64,000 bases of DNA. It comes from Octopus bimaculoides (lineage: Eukaryota). This document shows, piece by piece, positions 20,965-54,004 of the stretch (the first letter of the stretch is position 1; every line of letters starts with the position of its first letter). Under the pieces are notes generated by a model. It was not told the DNA's origin, did not search any database, and saw only the letters and a list, made by a program, of their open reading frames with translations. Location of the stretch: contig NC_069005.1 in the NCBI RefSeq assembly GCF_001194135.2, positions 19,851,887 to 19,915,886 on the forward strand, given 5' to 3'. Position numbers and translations under genes: made by a program.

Positions 20965-21117
20965 CTCTTCTAAGACATCATGTCATCGCCCATCTCCACT
21001 GTTACCACACTCCCCCATTGTGTCAGATGGAGCTCAGCATCCTCCTCTCGGCCCAGAGGAGGTTGTGCCACTGAGTTCTCGAACTATTGACACATATGCA
21101 GCGGCCATGTTCCAGAG
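20965..21117 (+). CDS. Candidate cassette exon (153 bp, phase 2-2), probably paxillin
   Basis: Acceptor ttttcttgtttccatccag|C. Translates (c)SSKTSCHRPSPLLPHSPIVSDGAQHPPLGPEEVVPLSSRTIDTYAAAMFQ(ag). Donor TTCCAGAG|GTCAGA. GC-richer island in an AT-rich intron; phase compatible with 47066 and 53809. Confidence 0.6.
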
Positions 21118-23364
21118 GTCAGACATCTTAAATAAATTATATTGCATGATGGGTATTGTACTGGTCCTACTGTCATTATTTCTATATTTATTTTATTCAT
21201 TTAGTTTCAGTAAATTTTATTATTTTGCTTGATAAATGTCATGAGGGTTTTGTTGCATATCATTGGCTGTTGTCACTTCCTGTTGTCACTCGCTGTTGTC
21301 ACTTCTCATTTTCTGTTGTGAAATTCTTACATTTCTCTAGCTTTTTACTTTTGTTACTGGTTTCTTTTTCTCTTTTGTGCTTATGTATTTAGTAATGTGT
21401 CAGTAAAATATCTGGATTACAAGTAGAAAAGCGTATATTTCACATATAGCTGATAATTTAACTGTGCTCAACAGTTGTTTCATCAGCAGTAGATATCATT
21501 ACATAATTGCATAGTTATTCAATTTAAAAGTGATGTTTACTGCATTATAGTAATGTATGGGAGTTTAACATGTTGAGCTCTTAATTTCCCTGGATATACA
21601 TCAATTCTTTATATTTAGATTAACGTATCAATAATCTGACTGATTCATATCTATCTATCTATCTATCTATCTATCTACCTATCTGTATATATATATATAT
21701 ATGTATGTGTATATATATGTGATGTATATGTATACATATGCTTTTTTAAGCTGGCATGGGCTGGAAAACGCTTGTGGCAGTATTCCATGGTCAAATGCTC
21801 TTCCTGATGCCAACCATAACTTGTTTTCGAATAAGCCACTGCATATCACTGGTCTTTCCATGTTGAACTGCTGAACATGTTGTTCATGCTGCACATAAAC
21901 AAATGTCATTGTTGAACATATGTATACAACATTTAATGCTGGCATGGGTAAGCTAGTTTAAGAGGATCTGGGCCAGAGGACTGCATCATGCTCCAATATC
22001 TGCTTTGGCATGGTTTCTACAGCTGGATGCCCTTCCTTACACCTACCACTACACAGCCTCTACTGGGTGCTTCTTTTCTCGGTACCAGCATTAGTGAGGT
22101 TACCATGCATCTTGCAAATCTACAATCCCTTTCAACTAAGTTGGGCTACCGCAGGGTGGGGTGGGGGCATCTTTATGCTAGATGTGAGATTAAGATATGA
22201 CAGAAGAGGCCAGGCATGCATATTTCATCTGAATGTTTATTTCTATAATAATAATAAAAAAAAATTATAAGAGGCAGTTTGCACAGAAATCTTCTCTTTC
22301 TCAGCACTTTACATTTTCATTTCACTGTCTTGAGATTGGTAGTTGGTGGATGGCATTTGATCTTTTTGAAATTTTATTTACTTTTTGGATATTTCAGATT
22401 TTTATGTTGTGGAGTTTCTTCACTTCTTGCCTCTCATTTGTCTTTTCCCAAACAGTAGTGATCACTGTTATCATCATTGACATCATCTTGAGGAGCTGCA
22501 TCACTGTCATCATCATCATCATCATCATCATTAACATGATTATCATATCATCGTTATCATCATCATCCTCAATATCATCATCACTACTACAACCATGAAC
22601 ATCATCATCATAATCATCATTCTTGATCTTCTCAACATCATCCTAAATTTGGCTTATTATTAAGCAAGAGAAATATCCAAGAGAATTACTTGCTAAGTAT
22701 ACTTCGCAGGAAGATACTGTGGTACTTAATTAAGTTTGGGTTCAAATCCCTAGTTTCATCTCTCCACCCTAACAACAACTACAATCAGAGTCAGTAAAAT
22801 AAAATAAGGTACCAGGGTACACTGAGGCTGATTTCCTTCTTTTTTTTTTCAACTATACATATCACTCCCCTTATCAGCCTGTATTTGGGTGTAGATATTA
22901 AAAAAGGGAATGGTTAATGTATGGAGGCTTGTAGATGTCAATGTCCATAGAGTACCATACAGCACAAAATACCTTGTGGTGTTTCATTGGGTGATTCACT
23001 TTGATAGTTCTATGCCCCACCTTTTCTTCAGTTTGTTGCTCTGCACTGACATTAGAAATAGCAGCCATGTACATTCCTTTAGCTTCTGAGTTCAAAATCC
23101 AGCTAGGTAGTGTATGGATGGGGGAAGGTCATCTTCTGGCAAAAACCTTCCAAGCATGGGTCAATATAAGCGCTTGTCCAAGTACTGGGTACAGGGTTTA
23201 ATTAACTACACCCTTCTACTAAAACTTGTGACTAGCATCCACCACTACCACAACCACCAGTACCATCTTCATCATCATCATCATCATCATCGTCGTTATT
23301 AAGAGCACACATCTTTTTTTTTCATGCTACACCAAATCATTATCATAACTGAATGTATTAATTT

Positions 23365-23522
23365 GGAGACACCATGCCATAGTTAGGACAGATAGTATCA
23401 ACTTACTATGGTTAGGACAGACAATATTTTGTAGGGGATACACCATACTTTGGTTAGGACAGACTGTATTTTCCAGGGGACACACCATACTTTGGTTAGA
23501 CAGCCTTACCTAGGGACACAAT
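23365..23522. repeat. About 41-bp tandem repeat (caccatactttggttaggacagac...gggga)
   Basis: Four diverged copies. Confidence 0.6.
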
Positions 23523-23657
23523 GGTCACAAAATGCATTTTCTGTCATCCTGTGGACAAAAATATTAAAAAAATTCACTTAAGTTTTTAAAAATATGACAT
23601 TGTTTTATTTATTTGTTCAGTTTTTTATTTGTTGGTATCTATGTGTTTATATGTGTG

Positions 23658-23694
<37 letters not shown>

Positions 23695-23769
23695 GTTTAG
23701 TGCTGGTGTAGGCTGTATGTGTTTGTCAGTATAGCTCATGATTATACTGTTTGCATATGTTGTAGCTTA

Positions 23770-23812
<43 letters not shown>

Positions 23813-24116
23813 CTCTCTCTCGTTCTCTCTCTGTATGTGTGTGTTTGTATAATGCCCAAATAAGTGTGTACATATCAGTTCACATATATGTATTCAGAAT
23901 TTATACATGTTAATGTATGGTTTGTTTGTTTGTGTGTATGCATGTGTGTGTGTGTGTGTGTGTCTATGTATACACACATTCACACATACATGAATGTATG
24001 TGTGTTTATTTGTAATACTTGTGCACTTTTGTGCATGTACACATTTATATATGTAATGTCAGTGTTTTTGTTTGTGCATATTTATCGGTTTTTATAGATA
24101 CCCCAACACTCTATTC

Positions 24117-24173
<57 letters not shown>

Positions 24174-24968
24174 NNNNNNNNNNNNNNNNNNNNNNNNNNN
24201 NNNNNNNNNNNNNNNNNNNNNNNNNNNNNNNNNNNNNNNNNNNNNNNNNNNNNNNNNNNNNNNNNNNNNNNNNNNNNNNNNNNNNNNNNNNNNNNNNNNN
24301 NNNNNNNNNNNNNNNNNNNNNNNNNNNNNNNNNNNNNNNNNNNNNNNNNNNNNNNNNNNNNNNNNNNNNNNNNNNNNNNNNNNNNNNNNNNNNNNNNNNN
24401 NNNNNNNNNNNNNNNNNNNNNNNNNNNNNNNNNNNNNNNNNNNNNNNNNNNNNNNNNNNNNNNNNNNNNNNNNNNNNNNNNNNNNNNNNNNNNNNNNNNN
24501 NNNNNNNNNNNNNNNNNNNNNNNNNNNNNNNNNNNNNNNNNNNNNNNNNNNNNNNNNNNNNNNNNNNNNNNNNNNNNNNNNNNNNNNNNNNNNNNNNNNN
24601 NNNNNNNNNNNNNNNNNNNNNNNNNNNNNNNNNNNNNNNNNNNNNNNNNNNNNNNNNNNNNNNNNNNNNNNNNNNNNNNNNNNNNNNNNNNNNNNNNNNN
24701 NNNNNNNNNNNNNNNNNNNNNNNNNNNNNNNNNNNNNNNNNNNNNNNNNNNNNNNNNNNNNNNNNNNNNNNNNNNNNNNNNNNNNNNNNNNNNNNNNNNN
24801 NNNNNNNNNNNNNNNNNNNNNNNNNNNNNNNNNNNNNNNNNNNNNNNNNNNNNNNNNNNNNNNNNNNNNNNNNNNNNNNNNNNNNNNNNNNNNNNNNNNN
24901 NNNNNNNNNNNNNNNNNNNNNNNNNNNNNNNNNNNNNNNNNNNNNNNNNNNNNNNNNNNNNNNNNNNN
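24174..24968. other. Assembly gap hiding the 5' boundary of the giant exon
   Basis: 795 Ns between a (TG)n tract and the poly-Pro start of the giant ORF. Confidence 0.95.
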
Positions 24969-52223: not shown

Positions 52224-52281
52224 AGTAAAAATAAATACAAAAAAGGGTTTTTTTTTGTATGATTGTGTATAGAGGAATATA

Positions 52282-52586
52282 TTATTTTGTTTAAAAGAGT
52301 TCCAACACTGTCTGTTTTTTATGTTTTATTTATAATCCTGCAAAACCAATGTGGGGTATAGAATATGGAATATACAATATATAATATAATATTCAATATT
52401 TCATCTACATCCAATACTTTATTTCATGGTGCCACCCATTTTTATTTTACTTTATTTTATTTTATTTTATATTATATATTGTATATTATATTATATATTG
52501 TATATCCCATATTCTATACCCCACATTGGTCCTGCAGGAATATAAATAAAACATAAAAAACAGACAGCGTTGGCACTCTCTTAAAC

Positions 52587-52593
<7 letters not shown>
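52282..52593. repeat. Long inverted repeat (111-bp arms, 90-nt spacer), MITE-like fold-back
   Basis: Manual alignment of 52282-52392 with the reverse complement of 52483-52593 gives 104/111 identity and no indels. Confidence 0.9.
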
Positions 52594-52680
<87 letters not shown>

Positions 52681-53523
52681 CTCAAACATGCTCAAACATT
52701 ACTAATAAATTAGAGATGAACACTGCATTAGGGTAGATGAATCCATTCTTTGAACAATTGGCACTCTCATCAAGCAAGATGGTTTAGTTGCCACTATCAT
52801 TCATACTATTAAATAATTGCAAATGTATTCACATTAAGCCCATGCTATTGCATTAACAACTCTCTACTGTTAAAAGAATAAATACATTCATATACTTGAG
52901 TGTGTGCTTGTGTGTATGTATACACACACACATACACACAAAGTTCAAATGTATGTGCAATATATATATGTATGTATACATATATGTTTTTGATTATATT
53001 TCTTTTTTAAAGCCAAAACAGTGTAATAAAAATGATACAGGTCGATAGATTTGTCTTGAATTTCAATGTTTCATGGTTAGGAACTCAGGAGAAAAGTCGT
53101 TATTTGTTGACGTCTCTGACTTTCATATGCACACTACAGGACAGAGGAGTCAGCAAATAACTTGTCTCCAAAGATTTCCTGAAGAGGCTTTAATCCTGAA
53201 ATATTGAAACACCAGCTAAAAGTATCAACCTGTATTATTTCTAAAACTTGCATCCTTTTGGCTTAAAAATATGAGACAATGTTTCATGAAAACTATACTA
53301 TTCATTTATGAAAATAGATAGAAGAGCCCAATTAGCTAGGTTCCTGTAATGAGCTTATGAATCTTTAAGTTGCATGGGGCCAAATCAAACTGTTTCCAAA
53401 AATAATACATACATATATACATATATACATACATACATATATATGTATATATATATATATATAGTGTGTGGCATTATTATTTTTCTGTAGTAATGCCCAT
53501 TATATAAATATAAACGAATAATA

Positions 53524-53561
<38 letters not shown>

Positions 53562-53625
53562 GGTAAAGCTTCACAAGTAGAATAGCACTCGATCAGCTAA
53601 AGAGAGTTGTGGTCTTTCTTATAAC

Positions 53626-53663
<38 letters not shown>

Positions 53664-53808
53664 ATGATAGATATAGATATATATTCAGCATGGTGGCTGA
53701 ATATTCCATTGTGGTTTTCAAGGTGACCCATAATTGGTTACACTTGAGATGCATATTGTTATTTTCACTGCATAGTATCCTCATTTCTTGGTCTCTTCTC
53801 TCCTACAG

Positions 53809-54004
53809 CCGACAGATGGCAGGGGTCAACTCAGCCGCTACAACTGTGGGTCAGCACCCACAGATCGGGGGCCAGGTCTATGGCCAAAATGCCACATATA
53901 TACAGCAGCCCCTCTACCAGGAAACACCAATGATGTCCCCACAAACAGCTTCTACCGCCACTCGAGAGCTGGATGAGTTAATGGCTTCACTCTCTGAGTT
54001 TAGG
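53809..54004 (+). CDS. PXN: Paxillin-family internal exon containing the LD4 motif
   Basis: Acceptor tctcttctctcctacag| and donor AGG|GTAAGT; 196 bp, phase 2 to phase 0. Translates (c)RQMAGVNSAATTVGQHPQIGGQVYGQNATYIQQPLYQETPMMSPQTASTATRELDELMASLSEFR. ATRELDELMASLS matches vertebrate paxillin LD4 (SATRELDELMASLSDFK) as recalled; a leupaxin/Hic-5-type family member is not excluded. Confidence 0.9.

What the first reader, a model, noticed from the sequence alone, without database searches (positions are those of the whole stretch)
20965..54004. Modular array of phase-2/phase-2 cassette exons sharing the same exon end and weak donor
Seen: exons 20965-21117 (153 bp) and 47066-48010 (945 bp) are both multiples of 3, both end in the identical 8-mer TTCCAGAG (FQ+AG), and use GTCAGA/GTTAGA donors. 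The LD4 exon has the consensus GTAAGT donor and a matching phase-2 acceptor. Any combination keeps frame. Inference: a combinatorially spliced linker upstream of LD4; the shared ends may indicate exon duplication or a shared splicing regulator.
Basis: partly seen in the sequence, partly recalled or inferred. Interest (0 to 1): 0.7.

Follow-up and report, generated by a model that had tools for sequence, protein, structure and literature searches.

The report
Octopus paxillin optional exons before LD4
This stretch is the middle of an octopus paxillin gene: one small optional exon already annotated in a sister species, one large conserved exon that no annotation includes, both apparently switched on by the same downstream signal, and an unrelated 11-kb reading frame lying between them.

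Summary
Exons 20965-21117 (153 nt) and 47066-48010 (945 nt) are 3n, phase 2/2, and end in TTCCAGAG before GTCAGA/GTTAGA. The LD4 exon (53809-54004) has a phase-2 acceptor and a GTAAGT donor. No assembly gap cuts an exon.

- **Gene:** paxillin.
- **Exon A:** an ordinary cassette exon, already optional in Octopus sinensis RefSeq isoforms X1-X7. Two more phase-2 cassettes (237 and 228 nt) lie upstream of the window.
- **Exon B:** in no protein found in the databases searched, but it is a real coding exon. Two other genomes keep the reading frame, 3n length, phase, acceptor and GTTAGA donor, with dN/dS 0.19.
- **Duplication:** not supported. Only the last ~26 nt are alike, and that end is not conserved in the other genomes.
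- **Shared regulator:** plausible through a different signal. TGCATG (the Rbfox motif) sits +26 and +18 nt after the two weak donors. In the other genomes it lies in a conserved intronic block.
- **Closest known:** mammalian "extended paxillin", a large exon plus small exons driven by Rbfox1. That array sits after LD4, so it is an analogue, not an orthologue.
- **Missed by the finding:** a >3,670-codon same-strand ORF between A and B, with its 5' end lost in a gap.

No RNA data were available, so exon B's use is inferred.

The parts
20965..21117 (+). Exon A: 153-nt phase-2/2 cassette exon of paxillin (SSKTSCHRP...AAAMFQ)
   Evidence: Searches give sequence, length and phase. It is 98% identical to residues present in O. 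sinensis isoforms X1, X2, X4 and X6 and absent from X3, X5 and X7.
21118..21123 (+). Donor of exon A, GTCAGA (pyrimidine at +3, A at +6)
   Evidence: With the exon end it matches 6 of 9 positions of CAG|GTAAGT.
21143..21148 (+). TGCATG (Rbfox-type motif), 26 nt after exon A
   Evidence: Window density is 0.54 per kb. The chance of a motif within 30 nt of a given site is 0.0147.
24174..24968 (.). Assembly gap that hides the 5' end (acceptor or start codon) of the giant ORF
   Evidence: The left flank is (GT)n. The right flank is open for 3,671 codons.
24969..35984 (+). Giant ORF: 3,671 codons after the gap, ending in TAA at 35982-35984. Acidic and Ser/Glu-rich. Either a nested same-strand gene or an alternative terminal exon.
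   Evidence: No Pfam family. No homologue found with the first 900 aa. O. sinensis has a 3,884-aa same-strand gene call of 11.7 kb inside its paxillin gene, fitting in size and place.
36007..36052 (+). Two AATAAA signals (36007-36012, 36047-36052) after the giant ORF's stop codon
   Evidence: read directly from the sequence.
47066..48010 (+). Exon B: 945-nt phase-2/2 conserved coding exon found in no annotation. Pro/Ser/Gln-rich, with PxxP runs.
   Evidence: Orthologous exons of 792 and 747 nt keep the acceptor cag|GCC and the donor AGAG|GTTAGA. Indels are all multiples of 3 and dN/dS is 0.19. Found in no annotated protein in the databases searched.
47655..47687 (+). Most conserved block of exon B, SEQSHIYKKIE, invariant in all three genomes
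48011..48016 (+). Donor of exon B, GTTAGA, identical in the two other genomes
48028..48033 (+). TGCATG, 18 nt after exon B
   Evidence: In L002 and L001 the motif lies at +69/+70 inside a 25-nt identical block in otherwise diverged intron.
53809..54004 (+). LD4 exon (RQMAG...TRELDELMASLSEFR): phase-2 acceptor, phase-0 end, present in every modelled isoform
   Evidence: Pfam PF03535 Paxillin, E=1.3e-6. 98.5% identical to O. sinensis paxillin.
54005..54010 (+). Consensus donor GTAAGT of the LD4 exon

Best explanation
The span is the LD3-LD4 linker region of an octopus paxillin gene. Paxillin is a focal-adhesion scaffold with disordered linkers between short LD docking motifs.

**How the array works.** The phase-2 intron in front of the LD4 exon holds a series of 3n exons, all in phase 2. 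Each encodes a disordered Pro/Ser/Gln-rich segment. Any subset can therefore be included without disturbing the LD4-LD5-LIM reading frame.

**Exon A** (51 aa) is a true cassette exon.

**Exon B** (315 aa) is a conserved coding exon that no annotation includes. Direct A-to-LD4 joining is already documented, so B must be optional. It is most likely included in only some tissues, giving an 'extended paxillin' of up to about 1,185 aa.

**Likely control.** Both exons have poor donors (GTYAGA) followed within 30 nt by UGCAUG, and none lies upstream. By the established position rule for Rbfox proteins, that predicts Rbfox-dependent inclusion in muscle or neurons. This is how the large extra exon of mammalian extended paxillin is controlled.

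**Shown:** sequence, phases, optional use of A in a sister species' gene models, purifying selection on B, and conserved splice sites and motif.

**Inferred:** that B is spliced into paxillin mRNA, that Rbfox controls it, and the tissue specificity.
For: **Gene identity.** The LD4 exon hits Pfam Paxillin. Exons A and LD4 are 98-99% identical to O. sinensis paxillin.

**Exon A is optional.** X6 minus X7 is exactly 51 aa, with junctions PPPPAG|SSKTS and AAMFQ|S|RQMAG. X1-X7 combine exons C1, C2 and A in 6 of 8 possible ways.

**Exon B is coding.**
- L002/L003 (792 nt) and L001 (747 nt) keep the open frame, 3n length, phase 2/2, acceptor cag|GCC and donor AGAG|GTTAGA.
- Between L001 and L002 the exon is 84% identical against about 50% for the flanks.
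- Gaps are 3, 18, 9, 9 and 12 nt.
- dN 0.106, dS 0.545, ratio 0.19.

**No other candidates.** A scan of the window outside the giant ORF found only A and B as phase-2/2 exons with coding signal.

**Motif.**
- TGCATG lies at +26 (A) and +18 (B), with none within 300 nt upstream.
- The chance per site within 30 nt is 0.0147.
- In L001/L002 it lies in a 25-nt identical intronic block.

**Precedent.** Rbfox1 drives the large exon of mouse/rat extended paxillin through flanking GCATG motifs (PMC11216089).
Against: - No protein among those searched contains exon B. This includes seven RefSeq isoforms, one O. vulgaris model and one O. bimaculoides model, and 1.84 billion representative sequences.
- No RNA reads could be examined.
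- L001 and L002 are of unidentified species, and no paxillin exon A or LD4 exon was found within 10 kb of their exon B. Linkage to paxillin there is therefore unproven.
- TGCATG also occurs at +77 and +141 after the LD4 exon, which is in every modelled isoform, so the motif is not exclusive to the optional exons.
- The motif's distance differs between octopus (+18) and the other genomes (+69/70), and the surrounding block is not shared.
- I noticed the motif by eye, so its p-values are post hoc.
Confidence: 0.6

Rival explanations
1. Exon B is a real exon but belongs to another transcript. It could be part of the same-strand giant-ORF gene that lies upstream of it, or of an unannotated gene nested in the paxillin intron.
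For: - No paxillin model includes it.
- A large same-strand ORF lies 11 kb upstream.
- A GTCAGT in phase 2 lies 80 nt before that ORF's stop, at 35902, and could in principle join to B in frame.
Against: - The giant ORF ends in TAA followed by two AATAAA signals.
- The 35902 site is weak, with C at -1 and C at +3. A GTNAG in the right phase near the end is expected by chance about once in eight.
- B has both an acceptor and a donor in exactly the phase of the host paxillin intron, and it lies 5.8 kb upstream of the LD4 exon on the same strand.
- In L001 there is no large ORF within 10 kb upstream of B.
Confidence: 0.15
2. A and B are two unrelated, ordinary optional exons. The shared exon end, the weak donors and the nearby TGCATG are coincidence or generic features, with no common regulator.
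For: - The 8-mer is not conserved in the orthologous exon B.
- AG|GT is the generic consensus.
- TGCATG also follows the LD4 exon, which is in every isoform.
- All tests were made after seeing the pattern.
Against: - 18/26 identity at the ends exceeds all 10,988 control windows.
- Two TGCATG motifs within 30 nt of two donors has a joint chance of about 2e-4.
- The suboptimal GTTAGA donor and a TGCATG-containing intronic block are conserved in other genomes.
Confidence: 0.2
3. A and B, or at least their 3' ends with the donor, arose by duplication of one ancestral exon.
For: The last 26 exonic nt are 18/26 identical. The donor is GTYAGA in both. TGCATGA follows in both.
Against: - The exon bodies show no similarity above shuffles (DNA p=0.67, protein p=0.19).
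- Lengths differ six-fold.
- The orthologous exon B ends differently (...SEVTE, ACAGAGAG), so the likeness appears to be octopus-specific.
- Neither end belongs to a dispersed repeat in the window.
Confidence: 0.05

Closest known systems
Paxillin isoforms X1-X7 of Octopus sinensis (RefSeq XP_036369077, XP_036369078, XP_029650836, XP_036369079, XP_029650838, XP_029650840, XP_029650842)
   Same: Same gene in a sister species. Exon A and the LD4 exon are 98-99% identical with identical boundaries. Exon A is already modelled as optional, together with two further phase-2 cassettes.
   Different: None of the seven models contains exon B. The giant ORF appears there as a separate nested gene call.
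Mammalian extended paxillin, ePxn (PMC11216089); human PXN alternative exons of 885, 276, 309 and 102 nt (supplement of PMC5316197)
   Same: - A run of 3n cassette exons in a disordered paxillin linker next to LD4.
- One large exon (885 nt against 945 nt here) plus small ones.
- Proline-rich and disordered.
- GCATG motifs flank the large exon, and Rbfox1 promotes its inclusion.
- Many combinations are predicted.
   Different: - The mammalian array lies after LD4 in a phase-0 intron, between the LD4 exon and the LD5 exon. The octopus array lies before the LD4 exon in a phase-2 intron.
- No sequence similarity was detected.
- It is therefore an analogue, probably convergent, not an orthologue.
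Paxillin beta and gamma isoforms (Mazaki et al. 1997, as cited in PMC5316197)
   Same: Small in-frame inserts close to LD4 that change the linker without touching the LD motifs or LIM domains.
   Different: The inserts are 34 and 48 aa immediately downstream of LD4. Gamma uses an alternative splice site rather than a cassette exon.
Metavinculin exon and other Rbfox-activated cassette exons in focal-adhesion genes (PMC11216089)
   Same: A tissue-restricted cassette exon in an adhesion scaffold, with an intronic (U)GCAUG as enhancer.
   Different: A different gene. Dependence on Rbfox is demonstrated there and only inferred here.

Membership tests
Paxillin gene (paxillin / Hic-5 / leupaxin family) | LD motif region matching the Paxillin family profile | tested here: met
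   The LD4 exon hits PF03535, E=1.3e-6, 28.8 bits against a cut-off of 25. TRELDELMASLSEF scores 21.6 bits on an LD-motif profile built here.
Paxillin gene (paxillin / Hic-5 / leupaxin family) | Four C-terminal LIM domains | tested here: inconclusive
   The LIM exons are not in the window (tblastn). The near-identical O. sinensis protein carries PF00412 LIM.
Cassette (skipped) exon | Transcripts both with and without the exon | tested here: met
   Exon A is in X1, X2, X4 and X6 and absent from X3, X5 and X7 of O. sinensis. It is present in O. vulgaris CAI9740639. These are gene models, not reads.
Cassette (skipped) exon | Exon B: transcripts both with and without the exon | not testable with these tools
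   Skipping is documented by the A|LD4 junction in four models. Inclusion was found in no protein database searched. No RNA data are available here.
Cassette (skipped) exon | Frame-neutral: length 3n and the same intron phase on both sides | tested here: met
   153 and 945 nt, phase 2/2, and every combination stays open. The orthologues are 792 and 747 nt.
Rbfox-activated exon | (U)GCAUG in the downstream intron close to the exon, none upstream | tested here: met
   +26 (A) and +18 (B), with none within 300 nt upstream.
Rbfox-activated exon | Motif conserved in orthologous introns | tested here: met
   For exon B, TGCATG lies at +69/+70 in L002/L001 within a 25-nt identical block. No orthologous DNA could be obtained for exon A.
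Rbfox-activated exon | Inclusion depends on Rbfox protein | not testable with these tools
   Needs a minigene, knock-down or CLIP experiment.
Orthologue of the vertebrate extended-paxillin exons | Same intron (after LD4, phase 0) | tested here: not met
   Human alternative exons 12-15 lie between the LD4 exon and the next constitutive exon. The octopus exons precede the LD4 exon in a phase-2 intron.
Orthologue of the vertebrate extended-paxillin exons | Detectable sequence similarity | tested here: not met
   A profile of exon B against 1.84 billion representative proteins found only P0004.
Tandemly duplicated exons | Similarity along the exon bodies | tested here: not met
   Local alignment scores are at shuffle level: DNA p=0.67, protein p=0.19.

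The most novel reading that the evidence does not exclude
The >3,670-codon ORF between exons A and B may not be a separate nested gene. It could be part of the same phase-2 array, as an alternative terminal exon or a giant cassette. The octopus paxillin locus would then also encode a ~4,000-aa LIM-less scaffold carrying LD1-LD3. Together with Rbfox-switched exons A and B, this would be an 'extended paxillin' system evolved independently of the vertebrate one.
Probability: 0.12. Interest if true: 0.6.

Novelty: new member of a known kind. Interest (0 to 1): 0.35.

Why it matters
Exon A needs no follow-up, because it is already annotated as optional in a sister species.

Exon B adds 315 residues of conserved, disordered, proline-rich sequence next to LD4, the motif that binds FAK and GIT. 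It is missing from every annotation found in the databases searched. Current cephalopod gene models therefore probably lack an 'extended paxillin'.

If RNA data confirm it, cephalopods and vertebrates would each have placed a large Rbfox-type cassette exon beside LD4, but in different introns. That would be a tidy case of convergent tuning of a focal-adhesion scaffold by alternative splicing.

The finding also flags an odd gene arrangement: an 11-kb same-strand ORF with its own polyadenylation signals inside a paxillin intron that the host transcript must read through.

Tried and rejected
- **Exon duplication.** Whole-exon DNA and protein alignments of A against B scored at shuffle level.
- **Repeat-derived exon ends.** blastn of both ends against the window found only the (TA)n microsatellite downstream of B.
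- **More cassette exons in the window.** A codon-usage scan for phase-2/2 exons outside the giant ORF returned only A and B. The third AGGTYAGA site, at 41801, has TGCATG at +24 but only 7 open codons in phase 2.
- **LD-like motifs in the giant ORF.** Five tandem SQLEALRMALAQME repeats looked LD-like by eye. A profile built from 58 paxillin LD motifs gave -3.2 bits, no better than shuffles.
- **Homologues of the giant ORF.** The first 900 aa found nothing, Pfam found nothing, and an exact look-up found nothing.
- **O. sinensis DNA for the region.** The gene spans 316 kb, so no DNA was returned. The O. bimaculoides model P0036 is not on record.
- **Paxillin exons near exon B in L001.** No A or LD4 exon within ±10 kb.
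- **Extended intronic blocks.** The blocks conserved between L001 and L002 are not found in the octopus window.
- **Species of L001/L002.** The run and assembly accessions appear in no paper held.

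
Full report
**1. Observation**

- Exon A, 20965-21117, is 153 nt. Its acceptor is ...ttccatccag| and it ends TTCCAGAG|gtcaga.
- Exon B, 47066-48010, is 945 nt. Its acceptor is ...tttttgtcag| and it ends TTCCAGAG|gttaga.
- The LD4 exon, 53809-54004, is 196 nt. Its acceptor is ...ctcctacag| and its donor is gtaagt.

A and B each begin with one base and end with two bases of a split codon, so both are phase 2/2. A+B+LD4, A+LD4, B+LD4 and LD4 alone all translate without a stop.

**2. Assembly gaps**

None of the four gaps in the span touches an exon.

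- Three gaps (36413-36641, 38460-38514, 48400-48702) are flanked by simple repeats or non-coding DNA.
- The gap 24174-24968 has (GT)n on its left and 3,671 open codons on its right. It hides the start of a giant ORF (section 9).
- The ORF that the ORF listing reports from 24072 is an artefact of reading N as X.

**3. Is the shared exon end more than chance?**

- TTCCAGAG occurs three times on the + strand (21110, 47877 inside exon B, 48003) and never on the - strand.
- The 14-mer TTCCAGAGGTYAGA occurs only at the two exon ends.
- The likeness extends to 18 of the last 26 exonic bases. Against 10,988 windows of coding sequence from the same locus the mean was 6.8 and the best 15-16.
- The 18 nt upstream of the 8-mer alone give 10/18, p about 0.01.

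So the shared end is real. It is also short. The exon bodies are no more alike than shuffled controls (DNA p=0.67, protein p=0.19), and neither end belongs to a dispersed repeat in the window.

**4. The gene, and exon A**

The LD4 exon matches Pfam Paxillin. A protein search returned Octopus sinensis paxillin at 98-99% identity. The seven RefSeq isoforms settle exon A:

| Isoform | Length (aa) | Optional exons between LD3 and LD4 |
|---|---|---|
| X7 | 664 | none; joins ...PPPPAG to RQMAG... directly |
| X6 | 715 | A (exactly 51 aa added) |
| X5 | 743 | C1 |
| X4 | 791 | C2 + A |
| X3 | 819 | C1 + C2 |
| X2 | 837 | C1 + C2 + A; skips a separate 33-aa N-terminal cassette |
| X1 | 870 | C1 + C2 + A |

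- C1 (79 aa) and C2 (76 aa) are two further cassettes in the same phase. They lie upstream of this window (tblastn).
- Six of the eight possible combinations of C1, C2 and A are modelled.
- The 'modular, combinatorial, frame-neutral linker' is therefore correct. For exon A it is already in public annotation. These are gene models; I could not inspect reads.

**5. Exon B**

No isoform contains exon B. Two searches found it in no annotated protein: one with A+B+LD4 against 5.8 billion clusters, and one with a profile of exon B against 1.84 billion representatives.

The only relatives were ORFs called on raw contigs. These are L001 (ENA ERZ21867824) and L002/L003 (Logan ERR12370323 and ERR12370320), of unidentified species and presumably other cephalopods. 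Their DNA shows the following.

- An orthologous exon of 747 nt (L001) or 792 nt (L002/L003), both 3n and open in the same phase.
- The same acceptor context (cag|GCC NCC NCC) and the same donor (AGAG|GTTAGA).
- Protein identity to the octopus exon of 40-43%. Invariant blocks include SEQSHIYKKIE and ESSVSEQQ.
- Between L001 and L002 the exon is 84% identical against about 50% for 400-nt flanks.
- All alignment gaps are multiples of three (3, 18, 9, 9, 12).
- dN/dS is 0.19.

Exon B is therefore a coding exon under purifying selection with conserved splice sites. The direct A-to-LD4 junction is documented, so B must be optional if it belongs to paxillin.

Three things argue that it does belong: same strand, the same phase as the host intron, and a position 5.8 kb upstream of the LD4 exon. 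This is not proven, and L001 shows no A or LD4 exon within 10 kb.

A codon-usage scan found no further phase-2/2 exon candidates in the window outside the giant ORF.

**6. Shared control**

Both donors match the consensus CAG|GTAAGT at only 6 of 9 positions, with a pyrimidine at +3. The LD4 donor matches MAG|GTRAGT at 8 of 9. The suboptimal GTTAGA of exon B is identical in the other two genomes.

The exon-end 8-mer itself is not conserved; the orthologues end ACAGAGAG. What both exons do share is TGCATG just downstream.

- It lies at +26 after A and +18 after B, with none within 300 nt upstream.
- The motif density in the window is 0.54 per kb.
- The chance of one within 30 nt of a given site is 0.0147, so about 2e-4 for both. 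This is post hoc, since I saw it by eye.
- In L001 and L002 TGCATG lies at +69/+70 inside a 25-nt identical block, AAAGAAATTGCATGGTGGTTTCTGG, in an intron that is otherwise diverged.

(U)GCAUG is the Rbfox binding site. From established knowledge, binding downstream of an exon promotes inclusion.

Caveats: TGCATG also follows the LD4 exon, which is in every isoform, at +77 and +141. The extended block is not shared with octopus.

**7. Comparison with what is known**

In rat and mouse, 'extended paxillin' (116 against 61 kDa) contains one large and three small extra exons. It is highest in skeletal muscle and heart. Its large exon is activated by Rbfox1 through flanking GCATG motifs (PMC11216089).

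The human exon table (supplement of PMC5316197) lists alternative exons of 885, 276, 309 and 102 nt (the last is beta). All are 3n. All lie between the exon that ends with LD4 and the next constitutive exon, so they are downstream of LD4.

The octopus exons lie upstream of the LD4 exon, in a phase-2 intron, and show no sequence similarity to vertebrate proteins. The octopus array works like the vertebrate one but is not its orthologue. Independent origin is the simplest reading.

**8. Mechanism proposed**

Symmetric phase-2 exons encode disordered docking segments, with PxxP runs and a conserved Tyr-containing block. They are inserted in variable combinations between LD3 and LD4. A and B need an enhancer because their donors are poor, and a downstream UGCAUG supplies it where Rbfox is expressed.

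- **Shown:** anatomy, phases, conservation, and optional use of A in gene models.
- **Inferred:** inclusion of B in paxillin mRNA, Rbfox dependence, and tissue specificity.

**9. What the finding missed**

The 26 kb between A and B is not empty intron. A same-strand ORF runs from inside the gap to a TAA at 35982-35984, at least 3,671 codons.

- Composition is Ser 13.8% and Glu 12.7%.
- It has 23 tandem 21-nt repeats encoding KPEESLV and 120-nt repeats encoding SQLEALRMALAQME.
- It ends in a basic tail, followed by two AATAAA signals.
- It has no Pfam family and no homologue was found.
- Its LD-like look did not survive a profile test.
- O. sinensis has a 3,884-aa, 11.7-kb same-strand gene call inside its 316-kb paxillin gene. 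Size and position fit.

It is either a nested gene or an alternative terminal exon. The gap hides the evidence that would decide between them.

**10. Verdict**

- Exon A is ordinary and already annotated as optional.
- Exon B is a likely new tissue-restricted paxillin exon, a new member of a known kind.
- The duplication idea is rejected.
- The shared-regulator idea survives in a different form (TGCATG).
- Interest is moderate to low, and depends on RNA evidence I could not obtain.

Noticed in passing
window 24969-35984 (+), gap 24174-24968: Giant same-strand ORF of at least 3,671 codons between exons A and B. It is acidic and Ser/Glu-rich, has no Pfam family and no homologue was found. It ends in TAA followed by two AATAAA signals, and its 5' end is lost in the gap. 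It probably corresponds to a 3,884-aa nested gene call in O. sinensis.
   Followed up: partly
window 28416-28906 and 30067-30556: Inside the giant ORF: 23 tandem 21-nt units encoding KPEESLV, and 90-120-nt units encoding five SQLEALRMALAQME repeats. The latter look LD-like by eye but fail an LD-motif profile.
   Followed up: yes
window 47877-47884: A third TTCCAGAG lies inside exon B (codes PFQSS), preceded by a pyrimidine-rich stretch. Used as an acceptor it would give a 126-nt phase-2/2 short form of exon B that keeps the conserved ESSVSEQQ block.
   Followed up: no
window 41795-41830: The only other AGGTYAGA on the + strand (AAAG|GTTAGA at 41801), also followed by TGCATG at +24. Only 7 codons are open in phase 2 upstream, so it is not a frame-neutral exon of the array.
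   Followed up: partly
window 47655-47687: SEQSHIYKKIE is invariant between octopus and the two other genomes, in an otherwise 40%-identical disordered exon. It is a candidate docking or phosphotyrosine motif.
   Followed up: no
window 47480-47560 and 47800-47945: Exon B carries trinucleotide repeats, (CAA/CAG)n and (ATG)5, that are absent from the orthologues. They account for much of its extra length (945 against 747-792 nt).
   Followed up: no
window 56239-56706 (-): Mariner-type transposase remnant (Pfam PF01359, E=1.3e-11), broken by a stop codon, in the intron downstream of the LD4 exon.
   Followed up: yes
window 54081-54150: Two TGCATG motifs at +77 and +141 after the LD4 exon, which is in every isoform, within CA-rich low-complexity DNA.
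   Followed up: no
outside the window (O. bimaculoides model A0A0L8GW07 = P0036): This older model continues after cassette C2 with a further 56-aa segment (LSRSESNPEIPPPRPV...GRYNE) and then apparent intron read-through. The segment is in no O. sinensis isoform and not in this window. It may be another exon of the array or an annotation artefact.
   Followed up: partly
L001 10921-10945 / L002 1370-1394: A 25-nt block, AAAGAAATTGCATGGTGGTTTCTGG, is identical between the two non-octopus genomes about 70 nt downstream of exon B. A second conserved block (ACCAAATCCAGTTATG) lies about 170 nt upstream of the acceptor. Neither is found in the octopus window.
   Followed up: yes
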